Below are positions 8,840 through 64,000 of a stretch of 64,000 bases of DNA, in pieces; positions within the stretch are counted from its first letter, which is position 1, and each line of letters starts with the position of its first letter. This DNA comes from Hemiscyllium ocellatum (lineage: Eukaryota): positions 1 through 64,000 of the forward strand of contig NW_026867842.1 of the NCBI RefSeq assembly GCF_020745735.1, given 5' to 3'. The position numbers were made by a program, and so were the translations under genes. The notes below the pieces were generated by a model that was given only the letters and a program-made list of their open reading frames with translations, did not search any database and had not been told where the DNA came from.

Positions 8840-11150
8840 CCCTGTCACCCTGCACATTGTTCCTTTTCAAATAACAGTCTCATTCCCTTCGGAATGTTTT
8901 AATTGAAGCTGCCTCCACCACACTCTTAGGCAGTGCATTCCACACCTTAACCACCCACTGGCTGAAAATGTTGTTCCCCATCTCACTTTTGTTACTTTTA
9001 CTTATTACTTTAAATCTGTGTTCTCTCGGTCTCAATCCTTTCTCAATTGGGGACATTCTCTCCCTATTTACCCTGTCCAGGCCCCTCCTGGTTTTAATTC
9101 CTCAATCAAATCTCTCAGCCTTCGCCAAAGAAGACAGTCCCCAATTCTCCAATCAATCTGTATAACTGATGTTCCTCATCCCTGGAAGGATCTTCAGGAA
9201 TATTTTTTGCCATTTCTACAAAACTTCAGCTCCTTCCTGAATTATTCACATTTTCTATGACCCTCATGATTTTATAAACCTTTACAAGGTCACTCCTCAG
9301 ACTCTTACGTGTCAGAATAAAAAGTTTCAGCTTTTCCAGCTTCTCATCGTCATGGAGTCATACAGCGTGGAAACAGACCTTTCAGTTCAACTTGTCCATA
9401 CTAACCAGATATCCTAAATCACCTCATCCCATTTGCCAGCATTTTGCTTACATTCCTCAAAACCCTTCCGATTCATGTACCCATCCCAATGCGTTTTAAA
9501 TGCTGTAATAGTATCTGCCTCCAATACTTACTCTGGCAGCTCGATCCAGACACATACCACCCTCTGTGTGACAAGTTACCCCTCAGGTCCCTTTTGAATA
9601 TTTTGCCTCTCACCTTAAACCTATGCCATCTTGTTTTGGACTCCCTTTCCCAAAGAAAAGGCCTTGGATATACACCCTGTCCATTCCCCTCATGATTGTA
9701 TAAACATCTATAAGGTCACCCCGAAGCCTTAGATGCTGTAGGAAAAATAGACCCAGTTTCTTCAGCCTTTCCCTATAGCTCAAACCCTCCAATTCCTGGC
9801 CATGTCCTTGTAAATCTTTTCTGCAGCTTTATAAGTTTAACAGCATCCTTCCTATTTTCGAGGTGATCAGGATTGTTCACATTATTGCCAAAGTGGCCTC
9901 ACTAATCTCCTGTACAGCTGCAACATGATGTCCCAACTCCTATACTCAAAATAGTGACCAATAAAAGCAAGTGTACCCAACACCTTCTTCATCACCCTGT
10001 CTACTTGTGACCCCACTTTCAAGTAATAATGCACTTGCATCTTCAATCCGAGGTCTCTTTGTTCAGCAACACTCCACAGGGCCCTCCCATTAACTGTCTA
10101 ACTCCTGCCCTGGGTTGCCTTTCCAAAATGCAACATCTCACAGTTATCTAAACTGAACTCCATATGCTACACCTCTGCCCATTGCCCCATCTGATGAAGG
10201 TCCCGCTGTACTCTGAGATGAATTTCTTCGCTATCCACTATCGTACCAATTTAGATATCATCTACAAACTTACTGTAACTCCTATATTCACATCCAAATC
10301 ATTTCTATAAAATAGTGAATCCAGCACCAATGTTAGTGGCACACAGCTATTCACAGATCTCCAGTCTGAAAAGCAACCTTTTACCACCACTCCTGTCTCC
10401 TATCTTCAATCCAATTTTTTTATCCCAATGGCTCACTCCCCCTGGATCCCATGTGGTCTAACCTTACTAACCAGTCTATCATGTGGAACCTTGTCAAAAA
10501 CTTTACTGAAGTCCATATTGACAATGTCTATTGTTCTATCTCCATAAATCTTCTTTGTCACCTCCTCAATCAAATTCAGGAGACATGATTTCCTATGCAT
10601 AAAACCACATTGATTATCCAAAGAATGTAAATCCTATCCCACAGAATCCACTCCAACATCTTACCCAACACTGACATCAGGCTCACTGGTCTATAATTCC
10701 CTGGCTTTTCCTTACAGTCTTTCTTTCTTAAATAATGGCATAACATTAGTCAACCTCTCTGGTTCTCCAGCACCTTACCCATAGTTGTCAGTGATACACA
10801 TATCTCAGTAAGGGGCCCAGCAATCTCTTCCCTAGTTTGCCACAATGTTCTGGGATACACCTGATCAGGTCCTAGGGTTTATCTACTACTTTTATGTGTT
10901 TTCAGATCTTGAGCGTCTCCTCATTTGTGTGTGGTCTCTTTTCAAGACATCACTATTTTTCCAAATTCCCTAGCTTTCTCCACAATATATACTGACCTGA
11001 AATATTTGTTTGGGATCTCACCCATGTCTTGTGTCTTACCAAAATATAGCACTCACATGTATCTGAATTAAACTCCATCTGCCATTCCTCAGCCCACTGG
11101 CCCAGTTGATCAAGATTCCATTGTATTCTTAGACAGCCTTCTTCACTGCC
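8840..11150 (-). mobile_element. CR1 LINE ORF2 fragments; part from 10192 mirrored at about 63040-64000 (+)
   Basis: Minus frames such as GLSYRERLKKLGLFFLQHLRLRGDLI and QCGFMHRKSCLLNLIE..VNMDFSKVFDKVPHDRLVSK (RT domain). Confidence 0.85.
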
Positions 11151-11153
11151 AAT

Positions 11154-11472
11154 GATTAGATTAGAGCCTCTACGGGGTCGAAACAGGCCCTTCTGCCCAA
11201 AAAGTCCTCACCGATCCTCCGAAGAGTAACCCACCCAGACCCATTTCCCTCTCAGTAATGCATCTAACACTGTGGGCAATTTAGCATGGCCAATTCACCT
11301 GACCTGAACATCTTTGGACCATGGGAGTAAACCAGAACACCCGGAGGAAACCCACGCAGACACAGGGAGAATGTGCAAACTCCACACAGACAGTTACCCA
11401 AGGCTGGAATCGAACCTGTGACCCTAGCTCTGAGAGGCTGCAGTGCTACCCACTGAGCCACCGTGCTGCCCC
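11154..11472 (-). mobile_element. HE1-like V-SINE; mirror copy at about 62720-63037 (+)
   Basis: Reverse complement of the HE1 head, V-domain and (ctaat)n tail. Confidence 0.85.
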
Positions 11473-11499
11473 ACCTGAGCCACCACTGAGCCACCGATG

Positions 11500-12600
11500 C
11501 CACCTGAAAATTCACCTGAACACACTCTCACAACTCTGGGCCCTTCCTGCCCATTACACTGCTACTATCCCAGTCTATATTCAGAAGCTAAAGACCGCCC
11601 CGCCCATTTATAACAACTCTATCATATTTGCAGGTCTCTGTAAATTCATGCATTTGTATTCTTCCACATCCTTCCCACTGGGAGGTGACTTATTGACTGA
11701 ACTGAGGATTCTGTGTTCCTTTGTGTTCCTCTTTGACATTCTCTCCTGGTTCGCACAGCCCTGCCAAGTTAGTTTTAAACCCTCTCTAACTGCATGAGTA
11801 AACCACCTCACAAAAATCCAAAGACCTCCCTCATGGATCCTCTTTCCAGCCCCACAGTCACCTGTGCTCACCTCCTGATTCTATTCTCACCTGCATGTAG
11901 CACTGGGAGTCATCCGGAGATTCCTCCTTTTCAGTTCCTGCTGCTAATTCCCTCCAGAGCTCCCAACCTTCTGACTGCAGGACCACGTTCCTTTTTCTCC
12001 ATCCATCACTGGGACCAATGTGGACTATGACTGCTGGCTGTTCCCCCTCTCCCCTCAGGGTGCTCTGCAGCCGCTCAGTGACATCCTTGACCTTGGCATC
12101 AGAGAGACAACACACCATCCTGGATTCCCATCTGCAGCTGCAGAAACACCTATCGATGCCCTCACTCTCAAATATCCTCTCACTATCGCTCTTCCAGTTT
12201 TCCTTCTGCCCTCCTGTATAGCTGAGCACCCCCCCCCCCCCCCCCCCGTGGTGCCAGGGACTTGGCTCTGGCTGCACTCCCCAGATGAACCATCATTCTC
12301 ATCAGGATTCTGAACTGAATCTTAGTTGGAGAGTGGGAGGCACTCAGGGATTCCTGTACTAGCTGCCTGGTCCTTTTGGACTGTCTGCTGCTCCCCCATT
12401 CCCTCTCTCCCTGCATACTCTGAAGCTTCGGAGTGACCACATCTAGAAACGTGCTCTCCACGGAGCTCTCAGCCTCACAGATGCTCTCCACTGACACCAG
12501 CTGCTGCTCAAGCTCCAGAACCTGGAGCTCCAACTGCTGTCACTGACCACACTTCCTGCTCTCATGGTATTCCAGGAGCTGGGAAGCATTCTGAAGTTCC
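11500..12600 (-). mobile_element. CR1 5' region with decayed ORF1 (coiled coil and SGNH esterase); mirror at about 61620-62690 (+)
   Basis: LQVLELEQQLVSVESICEAESSVESTFLDVVTP and GEQPAVIVHIGPSDGWRKRNVVLQSE resemble fish/shark CR1 ORF1. Confidence 0.75.
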
Positions 12601-13553
12601 CACCTAAATGCACACTCTCTCCACTCTTTGGTTATCTGTTGATAATGTTCTGATGATAAACAGCTACAGCAGGGCTCACAGTCCAGTAGGTTCAGTGTTC
12701 CAGGGTTTTGGGAAACTCTCCAGAAGACTTTAAGAAATAGGAGCAGAAATCAGCCATTCAGCCCATTGAATCTGCTCTGCAATTTGATCTTGGCAGATAT
12801 GCTTCTCAACCCCATTCTCCTGCCTACTCCACAGGAATTTTCCATCCCCTTAACAATCACAAACCTATCTATCCCTGTCTTAAATACACTCAGTGACTTG
12901 GCCTCCACTGCCCTCTGTAGCAATAAGTTCAACAAATTCACCACCCTCTGGCTGAAGAGATTCACCCTTATCTCAACTCTAAAGAGTCGGCCCTTCATTC
13001 TGAGGCTGTGCCTTGGTTACCGAGTCTCTCCTGCTTTTGGAAACATCTTCTCTGCATCCACTCTATCCAGGCCTGTCAGTATTCTGTAAATTTCAATAAG
13101 ATCCCTCTTCATCCTTCTAAAGTCCATTGAGTACAGACCCAGAGTCCTCAAGCACGCCTGATATGACAAGCCCTTCATTGCCAGGATCATTCTTGTAAAC
13201 CCCTCCAATGCCAGTACATTGTTCTATTAAAATATGGGTCCCAAAAATGCCCACAATATTCCAAATACAGTTTGACCAGAGCCTTACACAGCCTCAGCAG
13301 TACATCTCTGCTCTTGTATTCTGGCCCTATTGAAATGAATGCTATCATTTTATTTGCCTTCTCAAGCACAAACTGGACCTGCCTGTTAACCTGAAGGGAA
13401 ACCTGATGAGGTTTGTGCTTTAGATTTCCAAAGGCTTTCCTCATTTAGCAAACAGTCTTTGTATTTCTTCTTGTGTTCTATCTGCCACTTCTTTGCCAAC
13501 TCTCAGAGCCTATTAGGACCTTTTACAGCCTTCCCACTTCCTCAACACTACCT

Positions 13554-13876
13554 TTAGATTAGAGATTACTTTAGATTACTTACAGTGTGGAAACAGGCCC
13601 TTCGGCCCAACAAGTCCACACCGACCCGCCGAAGCGAAACCCACCCATACCCCTACATTTACCCCTTACCTAACACTACGGGCAATTTACGTGGCCAATT
13701 CACCTGACCCGCACATCTTTGGACTGTGGGAGGAAACCGGAGCACCCGGAGGAAACCCACGCAGACACGGGGAGAACGTGCAAACTCCACACAGTCAGTC
13801 GCCTGAGTTGGGAATTGAACCCAGGTCTCTGGCGCTGTGAGGCAGCACTGCTAACCACTGTGCCACCGTGCCGCCC
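13554..13876 (-). mobile_element. Young full-length HE1-like SINE; mirror at about 60344-60665 (+)
   Basis: Near-consensus, CpG-retaining copy with a gtaatcta tail. Confidence 0.9.
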
Positions 13877-14275
13877 CTCCTGTCCCTCCACCTATCTCAT
13901 GTTGTCTGCAAACTTAGCAACAATGTCTTCACTTCCTTCATCCAGATTGTTAATGTATAACGTGAATAGTTATTGTCCCAACATTGACACCTGCAGAACT
14001 CTACCAGTCACCAGCTGCCATTTTTCCTCACTCTCTGCTTTATGCCAACCTGTCCGTTCTCAGTCCATGCCAGTACATTGCCCCTAACACCGTGGGCACT
14101 TATCTTATGTCAAATACCTTCTGGAAATCAAAATACATTACTTCCTCGGACTCTCCTTTGCCTGACTGGCTCATTGCCTCCTCAAAGAATTCTAACACAT
14201 TTGCCAGGCATGACCTCCCCTTGATGAAACCGTGTTGACTCAGCCCTATTTTACCATTGCACTTCCAAGTCCACC

Positions 14276-14459
14276 GGGTGACACTGTGGCACATTGGTTA
14301 GCACTGCTGCCTCACAGCGCCAGGGACCTGGGTTCAATTCCTGCCTCAGGCGACTGACTGTGTGGAGTTTGCATGTTCTCCCCGTGTCTGTGTGGGTTTC
14401 CTCCAGGTGCTCCGGTTTCCTCCCACAGTCCAAAGATGTGCGGGTCAGGTGAATTGGCC
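14276..14459 (+). mobile_element. 3'-truncated HE1-like SINE; mirror at about 59761-59944 (-)
   Basis: tRNA-like head and V-domain are present, the tail is absent. Confidence 0.8.
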
Positions 14460-15514
14460 TTAGCCTTAGGCAAGGGGTATATATCCCCCATCAAATCTCC
14501 ACCTCCACACCCTGACTCCATTGATTCCTGAAAGATCATCACCAATGCCTCCACAATCTCTTCAGTGATCTCCTTCAGAACACACTGGTGTAGTTCATCC
14601 AGTCTGGGGGAGTTATCCAAATTCAGACCTTCCAGCTTCCCCAGTACCTCCTCCTTACTGATGGCCACTACACGCCTGAACTGCCCCCTGACAGTCTGGA
14701 AGTACTTGTACACTGCTGGTGTTTTCCATGGTGCAGACTGATGCAAAGTATCGATTCAATTCCTCGGCTATTCCTTCATTTCCTACTATTCTTTCTCCAA
14801 ACTCATTTTCCAGTGATCCAATGTCTAGTTTTGCCTCCCTCTTCCTTTTTATATATTTGCTAAAACTCTTGCAATCTTCTTTTATATTACTGGCTAGATA
14901 ACTCCCAGATTTCATCTTCTCCACCCTTAATGCTTTTTTAGTTATCCTCTATAGCTCTTTAAAGACTTCCTAATCCTCTGGCTTCCCACTATTCTCCACC
15001 ACATTGGATGCTTTTTCTTTTGCTTTTATGCTGTCCTTGACCTCCCTCATCAGCCATGGTTGCCTTGTCCTCCCCTGAGAATGTTTTTTTCTTTTTTGGG
15101 ATGAATTCCTACTCTACTTCCTGAATTACCCCCAGAAACTCTGCTGTTTGCTGCCCCACCATCTTACCTGCTCGGCTCCCCTTACAACCAACTCTGGCCA
15201 GCTCCTTCCTCATGTCTTTGCAGTTACCTTTACTCAACTGAAATACAGTTCCATCTGATTGTAGCTTCTCTCTCTCAAACTACAGGGGGAATTATGGTCA
15301 CTTATCCAGAGTGATACTTTCACCTTAAACTCACTAATCATGTTTGCCTCATTCCACATCACTGAATCCACACCTGCCTGTTCCATCATTGCTCAACCAC
15401 AAGCTGCTCCAAAAACCATCTCGTAGACATTCCATGAAATCCTTTTCTTTCGATGCACTACCCAGTCCACCTATCCATTGAGGTCTACCCTGACATTTAG
15501 TTTATCCCTTTTCT

Positions 15515-15807
15515 GGGCGGCATGGTGGCACAGTGGTTAGCACTGCTGCCTCACAGCGCCTGAGACCCAGGTTCAATTCCTATCTCAGGCGACTGACTGC
15601 GTGGAGTTTGCTCGTTCTCCCCATGTCTGCGTGGGTTTCCTCCCTCAGTCCAAAGATGTGCAGGTCAGGTGAATTGGACATGCTAAATTGCCCGTAGTGT
15701 TAGGTAAGGGGTAAATGTAGGGGTATGGGTGGGTTGCGCTTCAGTGGGTCGGTGTGGACTTGTTGGGCTGAACAGCCTGCTTCCACACTGTAAGTAATCT
15801 AATCTAA
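15515..15807 (+). mobile_element. HE1-like SINE with TSD ttttct; mirror at about 58411-58703 (-)
   Basis: Full head to 'gtaagtaatctaatct' tail; ttttct at 15509-15514 and 15808-15813. Confidence 0.9.
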
Positions 15808-16590
15808 TTTTCTGTCTCCTGATTGATTTCCTTCCCCACACCCTGATTACTGCTTGGAGACCTGGACATAACTTGCATCAGATTCTTTATTGTGGTTCCT
15901 CAGCTCTACCCACACAGATTCTACACCTTCTGACTTCTTGCTATTGATTGAATTTTATTTCACACTAACAAGGCAACTCTTGCCCCTCTGCCCATCTGCC
16001 TGTCCTTTTGATAGGACATGGATCCTTGGATATTTAGTTCCCAGCCCAGACCCCCTTACAGCCATGTCTCTGTGATACCCACAACATCGTACCTACCAGT
16101 TTCAATCTGCACTACAAGCTCATTGTGTATACTGTGTGCATTTAAGTACAACACCCTCAGTCCTGCATTGACTGCCCTCCTTCTCATCATTGTCCTCTTA
16201 TCTACTGTGCTTGAAGTTCGACTCTTGTTCCTTTCTGTACTCTCTGTCCTAGGTTGTCTTCTAGAAACTTGAATAACCTCTCCTGAGCCCTCCTCCACTT
16301 TAACTAGTTTAATTCCTTGGACACTCAATTTACCTTGATTTATTGCGTCACTTTGTCTACCTTATTCGGAATGCTTTGTGCATTTAGTTACAAACTCTTT
16401 AAATTTATTTTATTATTGATTTTCCCTGCACTTCTTTAGTTCCTTTGATATTCAAAAAATCCGTCCCCATCTTTTATTTTCTGGTAACAATCAATCCCAC
16501 CACTAACCAACAATCGACCTTCTCCTTCACCTTCTGTTTTCTCATTTTCCATCCAACTGAACCAAATTACTTTATCTGTGGATTGACCTC

Positions 16591-16910
16591 AGGCATGGTG
16601 GCTCAGTGGTTAGCACCGCTACCTCACAACGCCAAGGATACGGGTTCAATTCCTGCCTTGGGAAACTGTCTGTGTGGTGTTTGCACATTGTCCCTGTGTC
16701 TGTGTGGGTTTCCCCCAGGTGCTCTGGTTTACTCCCACTGTCCAAAGATGTGCAGGCCAGGTGAATTGGCCATTCTAAATTGCCTACAGTGTTAGATGAA
16801 ATAGTCAGGAGTAAATGTATGGAATGTTTCTGGGTGGGCTGCTGTTTGGAGGGTTGGTGTGGACTTGTCAGGCTGAACTGCCTGTTTCCACACTGGAGGG
16901 AATCTAATCA
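16591..16910 (+). mobile_element. HE1-like SINE; mirror at about 57310-57630 (-)
   Basis: 'ggcatggtggctcagtggttagcacc' head and V-domain. Confidence 0.85.
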
Positions 16911-17149
16911 GGCCAATATTTCTCATTATTGCTCTTTGATCTCTTGCTTCTACTTGATCCTGCTGTGTAGAAACTGGCTGCCACCTTCCTGACATTGCAA
17001 CAGTGACTCCTTGTCAAACAAAACTGTCTGTAAATGTCTTTGGAAGAGCCTGAAATGTTAAGGGCTGGATTGATGCCCATATGCTCTAAACTTTTCTGAT
17101 TTACATATCCATGCCTTTTAAATGTTTTAATCATACCAGCCTTCACCAC

Positions 17150-18700
17150 TTCTTCTGGCAGCCCATTTCATACATTTAACACCATCTGAATGAAAACGTT
17201 GTTCTTTAGGTCCCTTTTAAATCTTTCCCCTGTCACCTTCAACCTATGCCCTCCAGTTCTGGACTCCCCCACTCTGGAGAAAAGATCTTCTCTATTCACC
17301 CTATCTATGCTGCTCATGATTTTATAAACCTCCATCCGGTCACCCATCAACCTGCAATGATCCAGGGAAAACAGCCTCAGCCTATTCAGCCTCTCCCGAT
17401 AGCTCAAACCCTCCAACCTTGGCAACATCCTTGTAAATCTTTTCTGAACCATTTTAAGGTTCACAACATTTTTCCTCCAGCAGGGAGACCAGAATTACAC
17501 ACAGTATTCCAAAAGTGCCCTAACCAATGTCTGTCAGCCACAAGAGCTCCCAACTCCAATACTCAATGCACTGACCAATAAAAGAAAGCAAACCAAATGA
17601 CATTGTCACCCCCCCCCACCACCCCACCTACCTGCAACCTCACTTCCAGTGAACTATTCTTTTTTTTTGGATGAACTGAGAGTCTTCCAGTTGTGAAAGA
17701 TGCCATTCCATGGACTTTTGGATGAAGAGCAGGCAGTTCCCCCTGGTGTCCCTAATCAATATTTATCCCCCAGTCAAAATCAATGAAAATCTGTTTCTCT
17801 TCTTTTTATCATATTGTGTTTGGGATCTCGCTGTGCACAGTCTGCAGGAAAGATCCATTGGGACATCTTGATTTGGGGACAGGTGCTTCACAAATGCAAG
17901 TCTTTCTTTAAGTTTGAAGTCTCCTGATCCGAACACTCACCCATTGTCTGTGCACTCTCACCTTCCGGGGGCATGGGGTCATTAGGAGCAGTGACCCAAA
18001 GGACACTGAGACTCTTTGCAGCCTCACCCTTGACCTCAGCCCAGCAGTGTGCAGCAAGGTTTGAATTGTAATCTAGAACCTTCTACACAGACACCCCAAT
18101 GTGACTCATTCCCGAAGTGTGTGGATCCGAGTCTGCTCCAAAGTTCTCGGATAAATTTCTCCTGATCTGTGGGTGATCGGAGGTTTGTTAAAGAAGTATC
18201 AAGATCCATCCCACTTTCCAGCTCTTGCTCCATAGCTCTGGAGGTTTCACTGTTTGAAGTGAATACCCAAGTGTTTTTTTTCAAAGTGATGAGGGTTTCT
18301 GCCTCTCCCACCCTTTCAGGCTGTGAGTCCCACATCCCACCAAGCTCTGGGTGAAAACAAATACCCTCAACTCCCCTATAATCCTGCCCCCAACTGATTT
18401 CAATCTCTCCCCCGGGTTATTGCCCTCTGTGCTGGTGGAAATCAGTCCTTCCTACCCACTCTGTCCAGGCCCCTCATCATTTTACACACCACCATCAAAT
18501 CTCCCCTCAGCCTCCTGTGTTCCAACAAAAACACTCCCAGCCAATCCAAACATTCCTCAAAACTCAAAGTCCCATTCCAGACAAACTCTTCCTCTGTCCT
18601 GGTCTCCTGTGGGATCACATCCTTCCTATAATGTGGTGACCAGAACCGTACACAGTTCTCTCACTGTGCTCTAACTGGGGTTTTATACAGTTCCAGAATA
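17150..18700 (-). mobile_element. CR1 3' fragments; mirror at about 55520-57070 (+)
   Basis: VQKRFTRMLPRLEGLSYRERLNRLRLFSL (17168-17464) and a second tail at about 18050-18700. Confidence 0.8.
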
Positions 18701-18724
18701 ATCACAGTCAACCAAAAATGAGAT

Positions 18725-19030
18725 AAGGGAGGTGATGGTCTAATGGTGTTATTGCTGAGCTGTTAATCCAGAGATCCAGGTAATGTTCTGGGGACCAGGG
18801 TTAGAATCCAGCAGATGGTGGCATTCAAATTCAATCAAAAAAAATCTGGAATTAAGTCTAATGACGACCATGAAACCATCTTTGATTGTCAGGAAAACGC
18901 CATCTGATTCCCTAATGTCCTTTCGGGAAAGAAACTGCCATCCTTACCATGTGACCCCAGACCCACAGCAATGTGGTTGACTCTAAACTGCCCTTTGGGT
19001 GATTAGCGATGGACAATAAATGCTGCCGAT
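18725..19030 (+). mobile_element. Second tRNA-derived SINE family, probably DeuSINE-like; mirror at about 55195-55500 (-)
   Basis: tRNA-like head and 'ccacagcaatgtggttgactctaaactgccct', recalled as a Deu-domain-like shark SINE; the family name is unverified. Confidence 0.55.
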
Positions 19031-20135
19031 CCAGCAATTGCCCTCATTCCATCAAGGGAAAATGAAGAACAGTTTATCCCATGTGTCTTCTTACCACCTC
19101 ACTGACCTGCATTAAACACCATGGCCAAATCTTCCATCTCCACATGACTTGCAGTTTCAAATTCCTTCATTATCTGAGCTACAGATAGAAACATCCAAAC
19201 TACGAGCAACCGTAGGCCATTTGGCCCCCGAGCCTGCTCCACCATTCATTATGATCATGGCTGATTATCCAACACAGTCCCCTGTTCCTGCTTTCTCCCC
19301 ACATTCTTTGATCCCTTTCATCCGAAGAACTACATCTAATTCCTTATTGAACACATACCGCATCTAATTCCCTCATGCTGGTAAAATGGATGAGAATTAT
19401 TGGGTTGTTGTTTTTTGACCAGTATGGACACAATGGGCTGATGGGCCTTTTGGGTCTCTCTGACTCGATGATTCTATTATTATACTTTAAGAATAACTGA
19501 GTACCAAGGACTGACCACTGTGTAACTACCTGTCATTCAGAAAAAGACTCATTCTTTCTGTCCTGTCTGCCAACCAGTTCCCAATCCATGTCAGTATGTG
19601 AACCCCAATCCTCTTGTTCATTTGGTCTAGATCTGGAAGCCACACCCTTACTAATTGTGGGACCAGATTCTGAACAGTCTGTCTCATCCTTCGAGGGCTC
19701 CTACTGCCCTGACACTGATTTCCCATCATGCCATTGGTTCCGATCCACTTTTACCAAAGCACCACACAGTTTAGTAAAATGAAAACTTTTACACTTGCTC
19801 CATGGTTCTCCATTTCCATCCCTACTCTCAATCTCACTGAGTTCTGATCACTGTCACGAAAATGCTCCCCCATTGACAGCCCTTCCAGCTGCCCAGAAAC
19901 TGTCCCTTCTCTCTATGCTACTTCACCATCACCTTCTCAGGGGCAATTAGGGATGGGTAATAAATGTTGGCCCTGCCAGTGACACCCACATCCCAAGAAG
20001 CAATGTGAACAATGCTTGGTCATTTGTTGGGTTTATTCTGTATTGACGACAAATGTTCAAAAAGATTGTATGGCCAGATTATGGTTGAATTCCCTTCCAG
20101 TGGCAGGAATTAAAATTGTTTCTCTTGTCTTTCAG

Positions 20136-20464
20136 GCCGTGAGAACTCTCAGCCCAAGCTGACCTTGCTGCCCCCCTCCCCGGAGCAGGTCAATGCCAAG
20201 GGCACTGCCACCCTGGTGTGCCTTGCCAATCACTTCTATCCCGATGAGCTGGAGGTGCAGTGGAAGAAGGACGGTGCAGTCATTTCGGACGGGGTTCAGA
20301 CCAGCAACTACCTGCGAGCTTCAGACAGCACCTACAGTGTCAGCAGCCTGCTGACCCTCTCTGGGTCTGACTGGGAGTCCGACGCTCGCTTCTCCTGTGC
20401 CCTCACCCACGTGACCCTCCCCTCTCCCCTCAGCAAGAGCATCAGGAGATCAGAATGTGTGTAG
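20136..20464 (+). CDS. IGKC: Ig light-chain constant exon (kappa/type III-like), copy 1
   Basis: Acceptor tttcAG at 20134-20135; (S)RENSQPKLTLLPPSPEQVNAKGTATLVCLANHFYPDELEVQWKKDG..TYSVSSLLTLSGSDWESDARFSCALTH..KSIRRSECV*: C1-set Cys/Trp and the penultimate Cys for the heavy-light bond. Confidence 0.97.
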
Positions 20465-20603
20465 AGTGTTGGAGACAGTCCACAGAGGAGACACAACTTT
20501 AAACAGAACAGGGCTGAGCTGGCAGGACAAAGGTCATTGTCAGCACTGAATTTCAACTCTCTTCCTTCTCAGGATTGCTCAGAGAAACTTCTGAGGTTTG
20601 GAT

Positions 20604-53500: not shown

Positions 53501-53758
53501 TTGTGCAGCTAACATAACAAGGCAATCCTGTCCCCATCAAACATTCCCAGGACAAGGACAGCATGGGGTTTGACACAGTGTAAAGCTCTCTTGACACTGT
53601 CGCGATGACCTGCTTTAATATCCAAACCTCAGAAGTTTCTCTGAGCAATCCTGAGAAGGAAGAGAGTTGAAATTCAGTGCTGACAATGACCTTTGTCCTG
53701 CCAGCTCAGCCCTGTTCTGTTTAAAGTTGTGTCTCCTCTGTGGACTGTCTCCAACACT

Positions 53759-54087
53759 CTACACACATTCTGATCTCCTGATGCTCTTGCTGAGGGGAGA
53801 GGGGAGGGTCACGTGGGTGAGGGCACAGGAGAAGCGAGCGTCGGACTCCCAGTCAGACCCAGAGAGGGTCAGCAGGCTGCTGACACTGTAGGTGCTGTCT
53901 GAAGCTCGCAGGTAGTTGCTGGTCTGAACCCCGTCCGAAATGACTGCACCGTCCTTCTTCCACTGCACCTCCAGCTCATCGGGATAGAAGTGATTGGCAA
54001 GGCACACCAGGGTGGCAGTGCCCTTGGCATTGACCTGCTCCGGGGAGGGGGGCAGCAAGGTCAGCTTGGGCTGAGAGTTCTCACGGC
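53759..54087 (-). CDS. IGKC: Ig light-chain constant exon, copy 2 (identical to copy 1)
   Basis: Base-by-base reading shows identity with 20136-20464; acceptor AG at 54088-54089 on the minus strand. Confidence 0.97.
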
Positions 54088-57000
54088 CTGAAAGACAAGA
54101 GAAACAATTTTAATTCCTGCCACTGGAAGGGAATTCAACCATAATCTGGCCATACAATCTTTTTGAACATTTGTCGTCAATACAGAATAAACCCAACAAA
54201 TGACCAAGCATTGTTCACATTGCTTCTTGGGATGTGGGTGTCACTGGCAGGGCCAACATTTATTACCCATCCCTAATTGCCCCTGAGAAGGTGATGGTGA
54301 AGTAGCATAGAGAGAAGGGACAGTTTCTGGGCAGCTGGAAGGGCTGTCAATGGGGGAGCATTTTCGTGACAGTGATCAGAACTCAGTGAGATTGAGAGTA
54401 GGGATGGAAATGGAGAACCATGGAGCAAGTGTAAAAGTTTTCATTTTACTAAACTGTGTGGTGCTTTGGTAAAAGTGGATCGGAACCAATGGCATGATGG
54501 GAAATCAGTGTCAGGGCAGTGGGAGCCCTCGAAGGATGAGACAGACTGTTCAGAATCTGGTCCCACAATTAGTAAGGGTGTGGCTTCCAGATCTAGACCA
54601 AATGAACAAGAGGATTGGGGTTCACATACTGACATGGATTGGGAACTGGTTGGCAGACAGGACAGAAAGAATGAGTCTTTTTCTGAATGACAGGTAGTTA
54701 CACAGTGGTCAGTCCTTGGTACTCAGTTATTCTTAAAGTATAATAATAGAATCATCGAGTCAGAGAGACCCAAAAGGCCCATCAGCCCATTGTGTCCATA
54801 CTGGTCAAAAAACAACAACCCAATAATTCTCATCCATTTTACCAGCATGAGGGAATTAGATGCGGTATGTGTTCAATAAGGAATTAGATGTAGTTCTTCG
54901 GATGAAAGGGATCAAAGAATGTGGGGAGAAAGCAGGAACAGGGGACTGTGTTGGATAATCAGCCATGATCATAATGAATGGTGGAGCAGGCTCGGGGGCC
55001 AAATGGCCTACGGTTGCTCGTAGTTTGGATGTTTCTATCTGTATCTCAGATAATGAAGGAATTTGAAACTGCAAGTCATGTGGAGATGGAAGATTTGGCC
55101 ATGGTGTTTAATGCAGGTCAGTGAGGTGGTAAGAAGACACATGGGATAAACTGTTCTTCATTTTCCCTTGATGGAATGAGGGCAATTGCTGGATCGGCAG
55201 CATTTATTGTCCATCGCTAATCACCCAAAGGGCAGTTTAGAGTCAACCACATTGCTGTGGGTCTGGGGTCACATGGTAAGGATGGCAGTTTCTTTCCCGA
55301 AAGGACATTAGGGAATCAGATGGCGTTTTCCTGACAATCAAAGATGGTTTCATGGTCGTCATTAGACTTAATTCCAGATTTTTTTTGATTGAATTTGAAT
55401 GCCACCATCTGCTGGATTCTAACCCTGGTCCCCAGAACATTATCTGGATCTCTGGATTAACAGCTCAGCAATAACACCATTAGACCATCACCTCCCTTAT
55501 CTCATTTTTGGTTGACTGTGATTATTCTGGAACTGTATAAAACCCCAGTTAGAGCACAGTGAGAGAACTGTGTACGGTTCTGGTCACCACATTATAGGAA
55601 GGATGTGATCCCACAGGAGACCAGGACAGAGGAAGAGTTTGTCTGGAATGGGACTTTGAGTTTTGAGGAATGTTTGGATTGGCTGGGAGTGTTTTCGTTG
55701 GAACAGAGGAGGCTGAGGGAGATTTGATGGTGGTGTATAAAATGATGAGGGGCCTGGACAGAGTGGGTAGGAAGGACTGATTTCCACCAGCACAGAGGGC
55801 AATAACCATGGGGAGAGATTGAAATCAGTTGGGGGCAGGATTATAGGGGAGTTGAGGGTATTTGTTTTCACCCAGAGCTTGGTGGGATATGGGACTCACT
55901 GTCTGAAAGGGTGGGAGAGGCAGAAACCCTCATCACTTTGAAAAAAACACTTGGGTATTCACTTCAAACAGTGAAACCTCCAGAGCTATGGAGCAAGAGC
56001 TGGAAAGTGGGACGGATCTTGATACTTCTTTAACAAACCTCCGATCACCCACAGATCAGGAGAAATTTATCCGAGAACTTTGGAGCAGACTCGGATCCAC
56101 ACACTTCGGGAATGAGTCACATTGGGGTGTCTGTGTAGAAGGTTCTAGATTACATTTCAAACCTTGCTGCACACTGCTGGGCTGAGGTCAAGGGTGAGGC
56201 TGCAAAGAGTCTCAGTGTCCTTTGGGTCACTGCTCCTAATGACCCCATGCCCCCGGAAGGTGAGAGTGCACAGACAATGGGTGAGTGTTCGGATCAGGAG
56301 ACTTCAAACTTAAAGAAAGACTTGCATTTGTGAAGCACCTGTCCCCAAATCAAGATGTCCCAATGGATCTTTCCTGCAGACTGTGCACAGCGAGATCCCA
56401 AACACAATATGATAAAAAGAAGAGAAACAGATTTTCATTGATTTTGACTGGGGGATAAATATTGATTAGGGACACCAGGGGGAACTGCCTGCTCTTCATC
56501 CAAAAGTCCATGGAATGGCATCTTTCACAACTGGAAGACTCTCAGTTCATCCAAAAAAAAAGAATACTTCACTGGAAGTGAGGTTGCAGGTAGGTGGTGG
56601 GGGGGGGGGACAATGTCATTTGGTTTGCTTTCTTTTATTGGTCAGTGCATTGAGTATTGGAGTTGGGAGCTCTTGTGGCTGACAGACATTGGTTAGGGCA
56701 CTTTTGGAATACTGTGTGTAATTCTGGTCTCCCTGCTGGAGGAAAAATGTTGTGAACCTTAAAATGGTTCAGAAAAGATTTACAAGGATGTTGCCAAGGT
56801 TGGAGGGTTTGAGCTATCGGGAGAGGCTGAATAGGCTGAGGCTGTTTTCCCTGGATCATTGCAGGTTGATGGGTGACCGGATGGAGGTTTATAAAATCAT
56901 GAGCAGCATAGATAGGGTGAATAGAGAAGATCTTTTCTCCAGAGTGGGGGAGTCCAGAACTGGAGGGCATAGGTTGAAGGTGACAGGGGAAAGATTTAAA

Positions 57001-60000
57001 AGGGACCTAAAGAACAACGTTTTCATTCAGATGGTGTTAAATGTATGAAATGGGCTGCCAGAAGAAGTGGTGAAGGCTGGTATGATTAAAACATTTAAAA
57101 GGCATGGATATGTAAATCAGAAAAGTTTAGAGCATATGGGCATCAATCCAGCCCTTAACATTTCAGGCTCTTCCAAAGACATTTACAGACAGTTTTGTTT
57201 GACAAGGAGTCACTGTTGCAATGTCAGGAAGGTGGCAGCCAGTTTCTACACAGCAGGATTCAAGTAGAAGCAAGAGATCAAAGAGCAATAATGAGAAATA
57301 TTGGCCTGATTAGATTCCCTCCAGTGTGGAAACAGGCAGTTCAGCCTGACAAGTCCACACCAACTCTCCAAACAGCAGCCCACCCAGAAACATTCCATAC
57401 ATTTACTCCTGACTATTTCATCTAACACTGTAGGCAATTTAGAATGGCCAATTCACCTGGCCTGCACATCTTTGGACAGTGGGAGTAAACCAGAGCACCT
57501 GGGGGAAACCCACACAGACACAGGGACAATGTGCAAACACCACACAGACAGTTTCCCAAGGCAGGAATTGAACCCGTATCCTTGGCGCTGTGAGGTAGCG
57601 GTGCTAACCACTGAGCCACCATGCCTGAGGTCAATCGACACATAAAGTAATTTGGTTCAGTTGGATGGAAAATGAGAAAACAGAAGGTGAAGGAGAAGGT
57701 CGATTGTTGGTTAGTGGTGGGATTGATTGTTACCAGAAAATAAAAGATGGGGACGGATTTTTTGAATATCAAAGGAACTAAAGAAGTGCAGGGAAAATCA
57801 ATAATAAAATAAATTTAAAGAGTTTGTAACTAAATGCACAAAGCATTCCGAATAAGGTAGACAAAGTGACGCAATAAATCAAGGTAAATTGAGTGTCCAA
57901 GGAATTAAACTAGTTAAAGTGGAGGAGGGCTCAGGAGAGGTTATTCAAGTTTCTAGAAGACAACCTAGGACAGAGAGTACAGAAAGGAACAAGAGTCGAA
58001 CTTCAAGCACAGTAGATAAGAGGACAATGATGAGAAGGAGGGCAGTCAATGCAGGACTGAGGGTGTTGTACTTAAATGCACACAGTATACACAATGAGCT
58101 TGTAGTGCAGATTGAAACTGGTAGGTACGATGTTGTGGGTATCACAGAGACATGGCTGTAAGGGGGTCTGGGCTGGGAACTAAATATCCAAGGATCCATG
58201 TCCTATCAAAAGGACAGGCAGATGGGCAGAGGGGCAAGAGTTGCCTTGTTAGTGTGAAATAAAATTCAATCAATAGCAAGAAGTCAGAAGGTGTAGAATC
58301 TGTGTGGGTAGAGCTGAGGAACCACAATAAAGAATCTGATGCAAGTTATGTCCAGGTCTCCAAGCAGTAATCAGGGTGTGGGGAAGGAAATCAATCAGGA
58401 GACAGAAAATTAGATTAGATTACTTACAGTGTGGAAGCAGGCTGTTCAGCCCAACAAGTCCACACCGACCCACTGAAGCGCAACCCACCCATACCCCTAC
58501 ATTTACCCCTTACCTAACACTACGGGCAATTTAGCATGTCCAATTCACCTGACCTGCACATCTTTGGACTGAGGGAGGAAACCCACGCAGACATGGGGAG
58601 AACGAGCAAACTCCACGCAGTCAGTCGCCTGAGATAGGAATTGAACCTGGGTCTCAGGCGCTGTGAGGCAGCAGTGCTAACCACTGTGCCACCATGCCGC
58701 CCAGAAAAGGGATAAACTAAATGTCAGGGTAGACCTCAATGGATAGGTGGACTGGGTAGTGCATCGAAAGAAAAGGATTTCATGGAATGTCTACGAGATG
58801 GTTTTTGGAGCAGCTTGTGGTTGAGCAATGATGGAACAGGCAGGTGTGGATTCAGTGATGTGGAATGAGGCAAACATGATTAGTGAGTTTAAGGTGAAAG
58901 TATCACTCTGGATAAGTGACCATAATTCCCCCTGTAGTTTGAGAGAGAGAAGCTACAATCAGATGGAACTGTATTTCAGTTGAGTAAAGGTAACTGCAAA
59001 GACATGAGGAAGGAGCTGGCCAGAGTTGGTTGTAAGGGGAGCCGAGCAGGTAAGATGGTGGGGCAGCAAACAGCAGAGTTTCTGGGGGTAATTCAGGAAG
59101 TAGAGTAGGAATTCATCCCAAAAAAGAAAAAAAACATTCTCAGGGGAGGACAAGGCAACCATGGCTGATGAGGGAGGTCAAGGACAGCATAAAAGCAAAA
59201 GAAAAAGCATCCAATGTGGTGGAGAATAGTGGGAAGCCAGAGGATTAGGAAGTCTTTCAAGAGCTATAGAGGATAACTAAAAAAGCATTAAGGGTGGAGA
59301 AGATGAAATCTGGGAGTTATCTAGCCAGTAATATAAAAGAAGATTGCAAGAGTTTTAGCAAATATATAAAAAGGAAGAGGGAGGCAAAACTAGACATTGG
59401 ATCACTGGAAAATGAGTTTGGAGAAAGAATAGTAGGAAATGAAGGAATAGCCGAGGAATTGAATCGATACTTTGCATCAGTCTGCACCATGGAAAACACC
59501 AGCAGTGTACCAGTACTTCCAGACTGTCAGGGGGCAGTTCAGGCGTGTAGTGGCCATCAGTAAGGAGGAGGTACTGGGGGAAGCTGGAAGGTCTGAATTT
59601 GGATAACTCCCCCAGACTGGATGAACTACACCAGTGTGTTCTGAAGGAGATCACTGAAGAGATTGTGGAGGCATTGGTGATGATCTTTCAGGAATCAATG
59701 GAGTCAGGGTGTGGAGGTGGAGATTTGATGGGGGATATATACCCCTTGCCTAAGGCTAAGGCCAATTCACCTGACCCGCACATCTTTGGACTGTGGGAGG
59801 AAACCGGAGCACCTGGAGGAAACCCACACAGACACGGGGAGAACATGCAAACTCCACACAGTCAGTCGCCTGAGGCAGGAATTGAACCCAGGTCCCTGGC
59901 GCTGTGAGGCAGCAGTGCTAACCAATGTGCCACAGTGTCACCCGGTGGACTTGGAAGTGCAATGGTAAAATAGGGCTGAGTCAACACGGTTTCATCAAGG

Positions 60001-63000
60001 GGAGGTCATGCCTGGCAAATGTGTTAGAATTCTTTGAGGAGGCAATGAGCCAGTCAGGCAAAGGAGAGTCCGAGGAAGTAATGTATTTTGATTTCCAGAA
60101 GGTATTTGACATAAGATAAGCGCCCACGGTGTTAGGGGCAATGTACTGGCATGGACTGAGAACGGACAGGTTGGCATAAAGCAGAGAGTGAGGAAAGATG
60201 GCAGCTGGTGACTGGTAGAGTTCTGCAGGTGTCAATGTTGGGACAATAACTATTCACGTTATACATTAACAATCTGGATGAAGGAAGTGAAGACATTGTT
60301 GCTAAGTTTGCAGACAACATGAGATAGGTGGAGGGACAGGAGGGGCGGCACGGTGGCACAGTGGTTAGCAGTGCTGCCTCACAGCGCCAGAGACCTGGGT
60401 TCAATTCCCAACTCAGGCGACTGACTGTGAGGAGTTTGCACGTTCTCCCCGTGTCTGCGTGGGTTTCCTCCGGGTGCTCCGGTTTCCTCCCACAGTCCAA
60501 AGATGTGCGGGTCAGGTGAATTGGCCACGTAAATTGCCCGTAGTGTTAGGTAAGGGGTAAATGTAGGGGTATGGGTGGGTTTCGCTTCGGCGGTCGGTGT
60601 GGACTTGTTGGGCCGAAGGGCCTGTTTCCACACTGTAAGTAATCTAAAGTAATCTCTAATCTAAAGGTAGTGTTGAGGAAGTGGGAAGGCTGTAAAAGGT
60701 CCTAATAGGCTCTGAGAGTTGGCAAAGAAGTGGCAGATAGAACACAAGAAGAAATACAAAGACTGTTTGCTAAATGAGGAAAGCCTTTGGAAATCTAAAG
60801 CACAAACCTCATTCAGGTTAACAGGCAGGTCCAGTTTGTGCTTGAGAAGGCAAATGAAATGATAGCATTCATTTCAATAGGGCCAGAATACAAGAGCAGA
60901 GATGTACTGCTGAGGCTGTGTAAGGCTCTGGTCAAACTGTATTTGGAATATTGTGGGCATTTTTGGGACCCATATTTTAATAGAACAATGTACTGGCATT
61001 GGAGGGGTTTACAAGAATGATCCTGGCAATGAAGGGCTTGTCATATCAGGCGTGCTTGAGGACTCTGGGTCTGTACTCAATGGACTTTAGAAGGATGAAG
61101 AGGGATCTTATTGAAATTTACAGAATACTGACAGGCCTGGATAGAGTGGATGCAGAGAAGATGTTTCCAAAAACAGGAGAGACTCGGTAACCAAGGCACA
61201 GCCTCAGAATGAAGGGCCGACTCTTTAGAGTTGAGATAAGGGTGAATCTCTTCAGCCAGAGGGTGGTGAATCTGTTGAACTTATTGCTACAGAGGGCAGT
61301 GGAGGCCAAGTCACTGAGTGTATTTAAGACAGGGATAGATAGGTTTGTGATTGTTAAGGGGATGGAAAATTCCTGTGGAGTAGGCAGGAGAATGGGGTGA
61401 GAAGCATATCTGCCAAGATCAAATTGCAGAGCAGATTCAATGGGCTGAATGGCTGATTTCTGCTCCTATTTCTTAAAGTCTTCTGGAGAGTTTCCCAAAA
61501 CCCTGGAACACTGAACCTACTGGACTGTGAGCCCTGCTGTAGCTGTTTATCAACAGATAACCAAAGAGTGGAGAGAGTGTGCATTTAGGTGGGAACTTCA
61601 GAATGCTTCCCAGCTCCTGGAATACCATGAGTGCAGGAAGTGTGGTCAGTGACAGCAGTTGGAGCTCCAGGTTCTGGAGCTTGAGCAGCAGCTGGTGTCA
61701 GTGGAGAGCATCTGTGAGGCTGAGAGCTCCGTGGAGAGCACGTTTCTAGATGTGGTCACTCTGCAGCTTCAGAGTATGCAGGGAGAGAGGGAATGGGGGA
61801 GCAGCAGACAGTCCAAAAGGACCAGGCAGCTAGTACAGGAATCCCTGAGTGCCTCCCACTCTCCAACTAGGATTCAGTTCAGAATCCTGATGAGAATGAT
61901 GGTTCATCTGGGGAGTGCAGCCAGAGCCAAGTCCCTGGCACCACAATTGGGGGGGGGGGGGGGAGCTCAGCTATACAGGAGGGCAGAAGGAAAACTGGAA
62001 GAGCGATAGTGAGAGGATATTTGAGAGTGAGGGCATCGATAGGTGTTTCTGCAGCTGCAGATGGGAATCCAGGATGGTGTGTTGTCTCTCTGATGCCAAG
62101 GTCAAGGATGTCACTGAGCGGCTGCAGAGCACCCTGAGGGGAGAGGGGGAACAGCCAGCAGTCATAGTCCACATTGGTCCCAGTGATGGATGGAGAAAAA
62201 GGAACGTGGTCCTGCAGTCAGAAGGTTGGGAGCTCTGGAGGGAATTAGCAGCAGGAACTGAAAAGGAGGAATCTCCGGATGACTCCCAGTGCTACATGCA
62301 GGTGAGAATAGAATCAGGAGGTGAGCACAGGTGACTGTGGGGCTGGAAAGAGGATCCATGAGGGAGGTCTTTGGATTTTTGTGAGGTGGTTTACTCATGC
62401 AGTTAGAGAGGGTTTAAACTAACTTGGCAGGGCTGTGCGAACCAGGAGAGAATGTCAAAGAGGAACACAAAGGAACACAGAATCCTCAGTTCAGTCAATA
62501 AGTCACCTCCCAGTGGGAAGGATGTGGAAGAATACAAATGCATGAATTTACAGAGACCTGCAAATATGATAGAGTTGTTATAAATGGGCGGGGCGGTCTT
62601 TAGCTTCTGAATATAGACTGGGATAGTAGCAGTGTAATGGGCAGGAAGGGCCCAGAGTTGTGAGAGTGTGTTCAGGTGAATTTTCAGGTGGCATCGGTGG
62701 CTCAGTGGTGGCTCAGGTGGGGCAGCACGGTGGCTCAGTGGGTAGCACTGCAGCCTCTCAGAGCTAGGGTCACAGGTTCGATTCCAGCCTTGGGTAACTG
62801 TCTGTGTGGAGTTTGCACATTCTCCCTGTGTCTGCGTGGGTTTCCTCCGGGTGTTCTGGTTTACTCCCATGGTCCAAAGATGTTCAGGTTCAGGTGAATT
62901 GGCCATGCTAAATTGCCCACAGTGTTAGATGCATTACTGAGAGGGAAATGGGTCTGGGTGGGTTACTCTTCGGAGGATCGGTGAGGACTTTTTGGGCAGA

Positions 63001-64000
63001 AGGGCCTGTTTCGACCCCGTAGAGGCTCTAATCTAATCATTGGCAGTGAAGAAGGCTGTCTAAGAATACAATGGAATCTTGATCAACTGGGCCAGTGGGC
63101 TGAGGAATGGCAGATGGAGTTTAATTCAGATACATGTGAGTGCTATATTTTGGTAAGACACAAGACATGGGTGAGATCCCAAACAAATATTTCAGGTCAG
63201 TATATATTGTGGAGAAAGCTAGGGAATTTGGAAAAATAGTGATGTCTTGAAAAGAGACCACACACAAATGAGGAGACGCTCAAGATCTGAAAACACATAA
63301 AAGTAGTAGATAAACCCTAGGACCTGATCAGGTGTATCCCAGAACATTGTGGCAAACTAGGGAAGAGATTGCTGGGCCCCTTACTGAGATATGTGTATCA
63401 CTGACAACTATGGGTAAGGTGCTGGAGAACCAGAGAGGTTGGCTAATGTTATGCCATTATTTAAGAAAGAAAGACTGTAAGGAAAAGCCAGGGAATTATA
63501 GACCAGTGAGCCTGATGTCAGTGTTGGGTAAGATGTTGGAGTGGATTCTGTGGGATAGGATTTACATTCTTTGGATAATCAATGTGGTTTTATGCATAGG
63601 AAATCATGTCTCCTGAATTTGATTGAGGAGGTGACAAAGAAGATTTATGGAGATAGAACAATAGACATTGTCAATATGGACTTCAGTAAAGTTTTTGACA
63701 AGGTTCCACATGATAGACTGGTTAGTAAGGTTAGACCACATGGGATCCAGGGGGAGTGAGCCATTGGGATAAAAAAATTGGATTGAAGATAGGAGACAGG
63801 AGTGGTGGTAAAAGGTTGCTTTTCAGACTGGAGATCTGTGAATAGCTGTGTGCCACTAACATTGGTGCTGGATTCACTATTTTATAGAAATGATTTGGAT
63901 GTGAATATAGGAGTTACAGTAAGTTTGTAGATGATATCTAAATTGGTACGATAGTGGATAGCGAAGAAATTCATCTCAGAGTACAGCGGGACCTTCATCA

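What the first reader, a model, noticed from the sequence alone, without database searches (positions are those of the whole stretch)
10192..64000. Two convergent light-chain clusters forming an inverted repeat with arms of at least 17 kb
Seen: 10192-27527 is mirrored at 46951-64000, with C exons tail to tail 33 kb apart. Inference: a second J lies near 65.9 kb and V/leader near 66.4-67.0 kb in window coordinates. In this geometry V1 could join J2 only by inversion, and the arms could pair for gene conversion. Caveat: the left arm ends at a 100-N gap, so the orientation may be a scaffolding choice, and haplotig duplication must be excluded.
Basis: partly seen in the sequence, partly recalled or inferred. 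Interest (0 to 1): 0.7.

Follow-up and report, generated by a model that had tools for sequence, protein, structure and literature searches.

The report
Mirror-image shark kappa light-chain gene pair
Two copies of a shark antibody light-chain mini-gene lie tail to tail as a large mirror-image repeat in the assembly. The repeat is real, but the layout recurs in this genome's kappa gene array, and an assembly gap at the inner end of the left arm leaves the neighbourhood and orientation of the two copies unproven.

Summary
The inverted repeat is confirmed: 10192-27527 mirrors 64000-46951, with 199 substitutions and 29 indel events. Each arm carries an identical C1-set constant exon (20136-20464 +, 53759-54087 -), 33.3 kb apart, tail to tail. 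The left copy is a complete V-J-C minilocus (leader, V-set exon, RSS12, RSS23-J, C). V2 and J2 of the right copy lie beyond the window. Notes on the neighbouring window place them where the mirror offset predicts.

Arm divergence jumps from 0.43% to 3.34% at 23252. This fits partial homogenisation or a two-step duplication, not one molecule assembled twice.

The left arm matches the right arm up to the last base before the 100-N gap, so the gap cuts it off; homology is not seen to end. DNA right of the gap is not the mirror continuation of the right arm. The one read test returned only short multicopy contigs and could not separate alleles from paralogues.

If this is the epaulette-shark reference, it is a trio-binned, purged assembly, and 100-N gaps mark linked-read joins.

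My odds: genuine convergent pair about 0.6, wrong join or orientation about 0.2, retained haplotype about 0.1.

This scan noted many tail-to-tail kappa pairs elsewhere in this genome. V1-J2 joining by inversion is geometrically correct but untested. Interest is modest.

The parts
10192..27527 (+). Left arm of the inverted repeat: most of the J-C intron, the C exon and 7 kb of 3' flank. Cut off on the right by the gap.
46951..64000 (-). Right arm, the mirror image of the left arm. Cut off on the right by the window end.
27528..27627 (.). 100-N assembly gap at the inner end of the left arm. Not filled or looked up.
   Evidence: PMC8081667 states that scaff10x joins are written as 100 N
27628..46950 (.). 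Central spacer, 19.3 kb and not mirrored. Made of SINE copies, other repeats and debris of older kappa-cluster DNA.
7201..7249 (+). Leader exon of the left cluster: ATG at 7201, splice donor GT at 7250.
   Evidence: read from sequence
7436..7740 (+). V exon of the left cluster: open frame, YYC at 7699-7707.
   Evidence: Pfam V-set E = 2.5e-16
7741..7768 (+). V recombination signal: CACAGTG, 12-nt spacer, ACAAAAACC.
8200..8238 (+). J recombination signal: GGTTTTTGT, 23-nt spacer, CACTGTG.
8239..8273 (+). J segment (FGKGTKLRL), splice donor GT at 8274.
20136..20464 (+). Constant exon C1: splice acceptor AG at 20134-20135, stop TAG at 20462-20464.
   Evidence: Pfam C1-set E = 1e-22
53759..54087 (-). 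Constant exon C2, identical to C1.
10192..23251 (+). High-identity tract of the arms: 56 substitutions, 0.43%.
23252..27527 (+). Diverged inner tract of the arms: 143 substitutions, 3.34%. Its mirror part at 48.2-49.0 kb is a very high-copy repeat.
41066..41363 (+). Orphan remnant: the last ~85 nt of a C exon with its stop, plus ~205 nt of 3'UTR. 92% identical to C1.
25949..26081 (+). ~130-nt insertion present only in the left arm. Related copies lie at 36570-36698 and 34673-34763.
21495..21623 (+). Three extra 43-nt tandem units in the left arm only.
2411..2761 (+). Upstream non-coding block about 4.5 kb before the leader, with ACCACA (2584), GGAAGTGAAA (2660) and CAGCTG (2684). Other notes of the scan call it enhancer-like.
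   Evidence: notes s1-228491 and s1-203484 (unchecked)

Best explanation
These are two paralogous kappa-type light-chain miniloci (each V-J-C) of a shark, lying tail to tail as the arms of an inverted segmental duplication at least 17 kb long. If the neighbour-window notes are right, the arms are at least 25 kb.

Such convergent pairs appear to recur in this genome's large kappa array. After an older duplication, the stretch from the J-C intron through the C exon to about 2.8 kb past its stop was re-homogenised, by arm-to-arm gene conversion or by a later re-duplication. That leaves 0.43% divergence there, against 3.3% in the inner flank.

Each minilocus most likely rearranges on its own, by deletion between its own V RSS12 and J RSS23 about 0.5 kb apart.

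Shown: the repeat, the exons, the signals and the divergence step. Inferred: paralogy rather than allelism, true adjacency, the conversion mechanism, and independent rearrangement.
For: Repeat and gene anatomy.

The arms are two distinct DNAs, not one molecule assembled twice:
- 199 substitutions against only 18 single-base indels.
- An insertion and a tandem-repeat difference private to one arm.

The divergence step at 23252 gives a likelihood-ratio statistic of 198. The inner tract at 3.3% is about 17 times the species-wide nucleotide diversity of 0.002 (PMC10587355), which is hard to reconcile with two alleles.

If this is the epaulette-shark reference, as the scan's notes say, the assembly was trio-binned and run through purge_dups. 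That makes a retained second haplotype unlikely.

First-reader notes list many other tail-to-tail kappa pairs in this genome.

Weak read hints of more than two chromosomal copies:
- In run X17, an A-type contig has depth 52 and a B-type contig depth 27.
- In run X18, a shared segment has depth 96 against 23 for a B-specific one.

Within-cluster joining is the published rule for sharks.
Against: - The left arm ends at a scaffold gap, and the assembled sequence offers no check of the join.
- Homology running to the last base of the left contig is also what a redundant contig would show.
- The read test was inconclusive: contigs of 100-200 nt, and a whole region that is multicopy at 95% or more.
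- One right-arm letter (47570 C) was seen in none of the four runs (three samples), so some arm differences may be consensus errors.
- Transitions equal transversions (28:28) in the high-identity tract, which is unusual for real substitutions.
- The species and assembly are inferred from scan notes, not verified.
- Other pairs in the genome are known to me only from unchecked notes.
Confidence: 0.6

Rival explanations
1. The two arms are real paralogues, but their placement side by side in convergent orientation is a scaffolding artefact. The linked-read join across the 100-N gap put the left contig next to, or the wrong way round beside, a similar cluster of the same array.
For: - The only link between the arms is a 100-N gap. 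In the VGP pipeline this marks a scaff10x join, and that pipeline was used for the epaulette-shark assembly.
- Both contig ends carry 13 kb of 99.6% identical sequence, and the region is multicopy, so it is prone to ambiguous read placement.
- DNA right of the gap is unrelated to the mirror continuation of the right arm, so the sequence itself confirms no continuity.
Against: - Linked-read joins need shared barcodes from uniquely mapped reads. Later optical-map, Hi-C and curation steps did not break the join.
- Tail-to-tail pairs are reported at other places in this genome (unchecked), so the drawn layout is the expected one.
Confidence: 0.2
2. False duplication: the left contig is a second assembly of the same locus as the right arm, from the other parental haplotype or from mis-binned reads. 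The scaffolder parked it next to its allele in an arbitrary orientation.
For: - Homology runs to the very end of the left contig.
- The duplicate sits within 20 kb of its look-alike, beside a gap, which is the usual signature of false duplications.
- Divergence in the high-identity tract (0.43%) is only twice the species' diversity.
Against: - The assembly was trio-binned and purged.
- The inner 4.3 kb differs by 3.3%, with a private insertion.
- Neighbour-window notes describe the outer arms as diverged, with islands of identity.
- False duplications described for this pipeline are tandem, not inverted.
- Depth hints suggest more than two copies.
Confidence: 0.1
3. The pair is a working recombination unit. 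V1 joins J2 by inversion, which swaps partners and leaves V2 facing J1 for a second attempt. This would give sharks a form of light-chain editing between clusters.
For: - The geometry and the 12/23 rule allow it.
- Inversional joining between clusters is documented in zebrafish.
Against: - There is no evidence of use.
- V1 and J1 are 0.5 kb apart, whereas V1 and J2 would be about 58 kb apart.
- Published shark data show joining within clusters only.
- An earlier follow-up in this scan, on a head-to-head pair, reached the same negative reading.
Confidence: 0.07

Closest known systems
Cartilaginous-fish Ig light-chain miniclusters (V-J-C cassettes; kappa or type III, NS4 of nurse shark)
   Same: - One V, one J about 0.5 kb downstream and one C exon, all on one strand.
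- RSS12 at V and RSS23 at J.
- Many copies per genome.
- Rearrangement expected within the cassette (PMC5192425, PMC12227049).
   Different: - Published descriptions treat the clusters as separate cassettes. In the papers I read, they say little about neighbours, spacing or relative orientation.
- Here two cassettes are drawn 33 kb apart (C to C) in convergent orientation as a long inverted repeat.
- The J-C intron is long, at 11.9 kb.
Zebrafish IgL clusters with inversional rearrangement between clusters (Zimmerman et al. 2008, PMC3014032)
   Same: Neighbouring V-J-C clusters in opposite orientation, so a V of one cluster can reach a J of another only by inversion, which keeps the DNA in between.
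   Different: - In zebrafish the cross-joins were shown by cDNA clones. Here nothing shows use.
- Zebrafish V segments often oppose their own J, whereas here each V is co-oriented with its own J.
Large palindromes kept alike by arm-to-arm gene conversion (for example sex-chromosome ampliconic palindromes; from general knowledge)
   Same: Long inverted arms around a unique spacer, with very high identity over many kilobases that include the genes.
   Different: - Identity here is a mosaic (99.6% stepping to 96.7%), not uniform.
- Conversion is inferred from that step alone.
- The arms are part of a dispersed multigene array.
False duplications at contig ends in long-read assemblies (Rhie et al. 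2021, PMC8081667)
   Same: A duplicate that runs to the last base of a contig, next to a gap, close to its look-alike.
   Different: - Inverted, not tandem.
- Much longer than expected for the read-length type.
- 199 substitutions and private insertions.
- A haplotype-binned assembly.

Membership tests
Shark Ig light-chain minicluster (V-J-C) | Split leader followed by a V-set exon with an open frame | tested here: met
   Leader 7201-7249, V exon 7436-7740. Pfam V-set E = 2.5e-16, no stop.
Shark Ig light-chain minicluster (V-J-C) | RSS with 12-nt spacer after V and RSS with 23-nt spacer before a single J, on the same strand and a few hundred bases apart | tested here: met
   CACAGTG-12-ACAAAAACC at 7741-7768; GGTTTTTGT-23-CACTGTG at 8200-8238. 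These are the only canonical signals in the window.
Shark Ig light-chain minicluster (V-J-C) | One C1-set constant exon downstream, with splice phase matching J | tested here: met
   J ends with one spare base at 8273. The C exon starts with two spare bases at 20136. C1-set E = 1e-22.
Shark Ig light-chain minicluster (V-J-C) | The second (right-arm) copy also has V, J and their signals | not testable with these tools
   The predicted places (J at 65919-65953, V at 66452-66756) lie beyond the window. Only unchecked neighbour-window notes support them.
Kappa (type III) isotype | Groups with kappa rather than lambda, sigma or sigma-2 in a tree of V and C | not tested
   Only kappa-like motifs ([17 protein letters not shown]) and hits to light-chain V domains in the PDB. 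The scan's other notes call the array kappa.
Inversional inter-cluster rearrangement system (zebrafish type) | Clusters in opposite orientation on one chromosome within reach | tested here: inconclusive
   Drawn so in the assembly, but the join is a 100-N gap.
Inversional inter-cluster rearrangement system (zebrafish type) | Transcripts or DNA joints that combine a V of one cluster with the J-C of another | not testable with these tools
C exons are identical, so cDNA would barely tell the clusters apart.
Gene-converting palindrome | Arm identity far above that expected from the age of the duplication, with sharp tract borders | tested here: met
   0.43% against 3.34%, with a change point at 23252 and a likelihood-ratio statistic of 198. 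A two-step duplication would give the same picture.
Assembly false duplication | Each copy at half depth, or copy-specific variants allelic | tested here: inconclusive
   Only short contigs of public runs could be laid, and the region is multicopy, so no clean depth was obtained.

The most novel reading that the evidence does not exclude
Convergent kappa minilocus pairs are functional units in this shark. Arm-to-arm conversion would keep J, the intron, C and the 3' flank identical while the V regions drift. RAG-mediated inversion between V1 and J2 would swap partners and leave a second joinable V2-J1 pair. That would be a built-in editing route in an animal thought to rearrange only within single clusters.
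Probability: 0.07. Interest if true: 0.75.

Novelty: new member of a known kind. Interest (0 to 1): 0.3.

Why it matters
How shark antibody miniloci are arranged relative to one another is little described in the papers I read. That arrangement bears on two questions: whether joining between clusters, or concerted evolution of constant regions, is physically favoured.

If the pair is genuine, it is one more example of a recurrent convergent-pair layout. It also gives a clean divergence step that could be used to study gene conversion in the array.

If it is an artefact, it warns that copy counts and orientations in this roughly 200-copy array, as estimated in a scan note, need read-level checks wherever a gap touches a repeat arm.

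Tried and rejected
- **Read test.** I laid public runs of three samples on 44001-50000, across the inner border of the right arm. I hoped for a depth step or for both arm types in unrelated animals.
  - Only Logan contigs of 100-200 nt were available, and word depth ranged from 35 to 97,000.
  - Other letters were as dense in the spacer as in the arm, and few coincided with the arm differences.
  - The test is inconclusive for allele versus paralogue. The samples may also be members of one pedigree.
- **Protein search with the C domain.** It returned only four fragments: two shark-like pieces filed under bacterial names, one eukprot protein and one catshark protein. It gave no locus to compare.
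- **Pfam on eight long ORFs of the arms and spacer, and an Atlas look-up.** I call it only a high-copy repeat.
- **Rfam over the window and over the arm-specific 130-nt insertion.** No hammerhead or other family was found.
- **Nested older palindrome in the spacer** (37119-39263 against 45843-41932, 79-88% identity). I considered it, then set it aside. The right-hand pieces have depths of hundreds to thousands, so two opposed copies of one long repeat explain it as well.
- **Same molecule assembled twice.** Rejected, because substitutions far outnumber single-base indels.
- **RNA-run search with the V exon.** V words occur in small runs (guessed to be RNA) and larger runs labelled with about nine organism codes. 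The V family is therefore widely shared and probably expressed, but the result is not specific to this cluster.

Full report
**1. Observation**

The window has one N run, 27528-27627. The repeat finder lists 25 collinear inverted blocks that together tile 10192-27527 against 64000-46951. blastn merges them into three segments:
- 10192-21592, at 99.15% identity.
- 21591-25948, at 96.5%.
- 26082-27527, at 97.9%.

A MAFFT alignment of the arms (17,336 and 17,050 nt) shows 199 substitutions and 29 indel events. Of the indels, 18 are single bases.

**2. Anatomy of the left copy**

The left copy is a complete light-chain minilocus on the + strand:
- Leader exon 7201-7249.
- V exon 7436-7740, open, Pfam V-set E = 2.5e-16.
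- CACAGTG-12-ACAAAAACC at 7741-7768.
- GGTTTTTGT-23-CACTGTG at 8200-8238.
- J at 8239-8273 (FGKGTKLRL), with splice donor at 8274.

After an 11.9-kb intron comes the C exon, 20136-20464 (splice acceptor at 20134-20135, stop at 20462). It scores Pfam C1-set E = 1e-22. The spare bases of J and C match in phase.

A scan for recombination signals finds no other canonical V or J signal in the window.

**3. The right copy**

The second C exon lies at 53759-54087 on the - strand. It is identical in protein and sits inside a 958-nt stretch without any difference. The C exons are tail to tail, 33,294 nt apart if the gap is taken as 100.

J2 and V2 would lie at 65919-65953 and 66452-66756 by the mirror offset of 74192. 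That is outside the window and cannot be checked here.

Two unchecked notes on the next window give partial support:
- One describes a promoter-leader-intron tract at 66756-67147.
- The other describes a motif block at 71431-71781.

These map through the same offset exactly onto my left-arm promoter-leader-intron (7045-7436) and onto 2411-2761. In that second stretch I do find ACCACA, GGAAGTGAAA and CAGCTG. If the notes are right, the arms are at least 25 kb long.

**4. The gap, tested first**

No coding feature crosses it. The ORF 27325-27648 is merely mechanical.

The left arm matches the right arm up to its very last base, with no decay towards the end. The visible inner end of the left arm is therefore set by the contig end, not by a loss of homology.

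The first 2.6 kb right of the gap (27628-30227) has no likeness to the mirror continuation of the right arm (46950 down to 44351). The local alignment score is 15, against 14.7 +/- 1.4 for shuffles.

So the two sides of the gap are not shown to be continuous. Either the arm ends inside the gap, or the gap hides more than 100 bases. I did not look up or fill the gap.

**5. Artefact or real**

*Same molecule assembled twice.* This is rejected. Substitutions far outnumber single-base indels. The left arm also has a private ~130-nt insertion (25949-26081, with relatives at 36570-36698 and 34673-34763) and three extra 43-nt tandem units (21495-21623).

*Retained haplotype.* The scan's notes name the epaulette shark. 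Its reference was made as follows (PMC10587355):
- TrioCanu on parent-binned PacBio reads.
- purge_dups.
- scaff10x, Bionano and Salsa scaffolding.

In that pipeline a scaff10x join is written as 100 N (PMC8081667). Binning makes a retained second haplotype unlikely, though not impossible in a multicopy region.

Mean nucleotide diversity in the species is 0.002. The inner 4.3 kb of the arms differs by 3.34%.

*Read test.* The one read-laying run, on 44001-50000 with runs of three samples, returned only contigs of 100-200 nt.
- Word depth ran from 35 to 97,000.
- Other letters were as frequent in the spacer as in the arm.
- Few of them coincided with the arm differences.

Both arm types appear in sample S9: left-arm letters at 48192 and 48206, and an exact right-arm contig at 48717-48802. 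The depth ratios hint at more than two chromosomal copies (52 against 27 in X17; 96 for a shared piece against 23 for a right-arm piece in X18). In a repeat family of this size that is weak evidence.

The right-arm letter C at 47570 was seen in no run. Some differences may therefore be consensus errors. The 28:28 ratio of transitions to transversions in the high-identity tract points the same way.

The test does not settle allele versus paralogue.

*Wrong join.* This remains possible, because both contig ends carry 13 kb of near-identical sequence.

*Context.* Against both artefact readings, first-reader notes list many tail-to-tail kappa pairs elsewhere in this genome. One earlier follow-up called opposed pairs routine in a roughly 200-copy array. 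I could not check these notes.

**6. Divergence pattern**

A two-rate model places a change point at 23252. Divergence is 0.43% on the outer side (56 substitutions in 13.06 kb) and 3.34% on the inner side (143 in 4.28 kb). The likelihood-ratio statistic is 198.

Substitutions are clustered within both parts. The variance-to-mean ratio is 2.5 and 3.6, and none of 5000 permutations run on the outer tract reached its observed ratio of 2.5.

The step lies at a SINE-like fragment (23240-23394), at the edge of a repeat whose mirror copy has very high depth.

The pattern fits an older inverted duplication whose gene-bearing part was later homogenised, by conversion between the arms or by re-duplication. 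It is the same observation as note s1-219841 on this window, and I confirm it.

**7. The spacer**

27628-46950 holds several things:
- SINE copies at 30.3 and 32.6 kb.
- A 70%-identical piece of J-C intron (30588-32143 against 9503-11033).
- An orphan 3' end of a C exon with its 3'UTR (41066-41363, 92% identity).

So the neighbourhood carries wreckage of older cluster copies. An apparent inner inverted repeat (37.1-39.3 kb against 45.8-41.9 kb, 79-88% identity) is probably two opposed copies of a long repeat, given its depth.

**8. Mechanism and comparison**

With both signals placed coding-left and signal-right on the + strand, V1 and J2 could join only by inversion. That inversion would put V1 in front of J2-C2 and leave V2 facing J1-C1.

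But V1 is 0.5 kb from J1 and about 58 kb from J2. The published view is that shark V-J joining stays within a cluster (PMC5192425, PMC3014032). Only zebrafish has documented inversional joining between clusters (PMC3014032).

The first differences are at 20661, 20820 and 20868, near or beyond the candidate poly(A) signals at 20604, 20753 and 20961. DNA joints must be sought instead.

**9. Verdict**

The repeat is real in the assembly.

My odds:
- About 0.6 for a genuine convergent pair of paralogous kappa miniloci, partly homogenised.
- About 0.2 for a wrong join or orientation.
- About 0.1 for a retained haplotype.

Cross-joining by inversion is unproven and unlikely to be the main route. The layout was found repeatedly by this scan on other DNA of the same genome. 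This is a further member of a known kind, and interest is modest.

Noticed in passing
window 41066-41363 (+): Orphan fragment of a kappa constant exon (last ~85 nt with the stop codon) plus ~205 nt of 3'UTR. It is 92% identical to C1 and lies alone in the central spacer. Homology stops near 20668 of the intact gene.
   Followed up: partly
window 25949-26081; also 36570-36698 and 34673-34763: A ~130-nt unit is inserted in the left arm only and has 88-91% copies in the spacer, so it is probably a small mobile element. A neighbouring-window note describes a 138-nt unit with a hammerhead core, but Rfam found no ribozyme in this copy.
   Followed up: partly
window 2411-2761: Non-coding block about 4.5 kb upstream of the leader, with a RUNX-like ACCACA (2584), an ETS-IRF composite GGAAGTGAAA (2660) and an E-box CAGCTG (2684). 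It matches the enhancer-like block that other notes of the scan describe upstream of kappa genes.
   Followed up: partly
window 48201-48600 (mirror about 25.9-26.2 kb): Summed word depth of 10,000 to 97,000 in all four public runs. This short stretch of the arms belongs to an extremely abundant repeat of the genome.
   Followed up: no
window 47570: The assembled right-arm letter C was seen in none of the four runs (three samples). All contigs there carry T, the left-arm letter. This may be a residual consensus error.
   Followed up: no
window 7436-7740: 31-letter words of this V exon occur in public runs labelled with about nine different organism codes. The V family is therefore conserved almost letter for letter across related species, in line with slow shark evolution.
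   Followed up: no
window 30588-32143 against 9503-11033: A 1.5-kb piece of the spacer is 70% identical, on the same strand, to part of the J-C intron of the left cluster. It is either debris of an older cluster copy or a shared old repeat.
   Followed up: no
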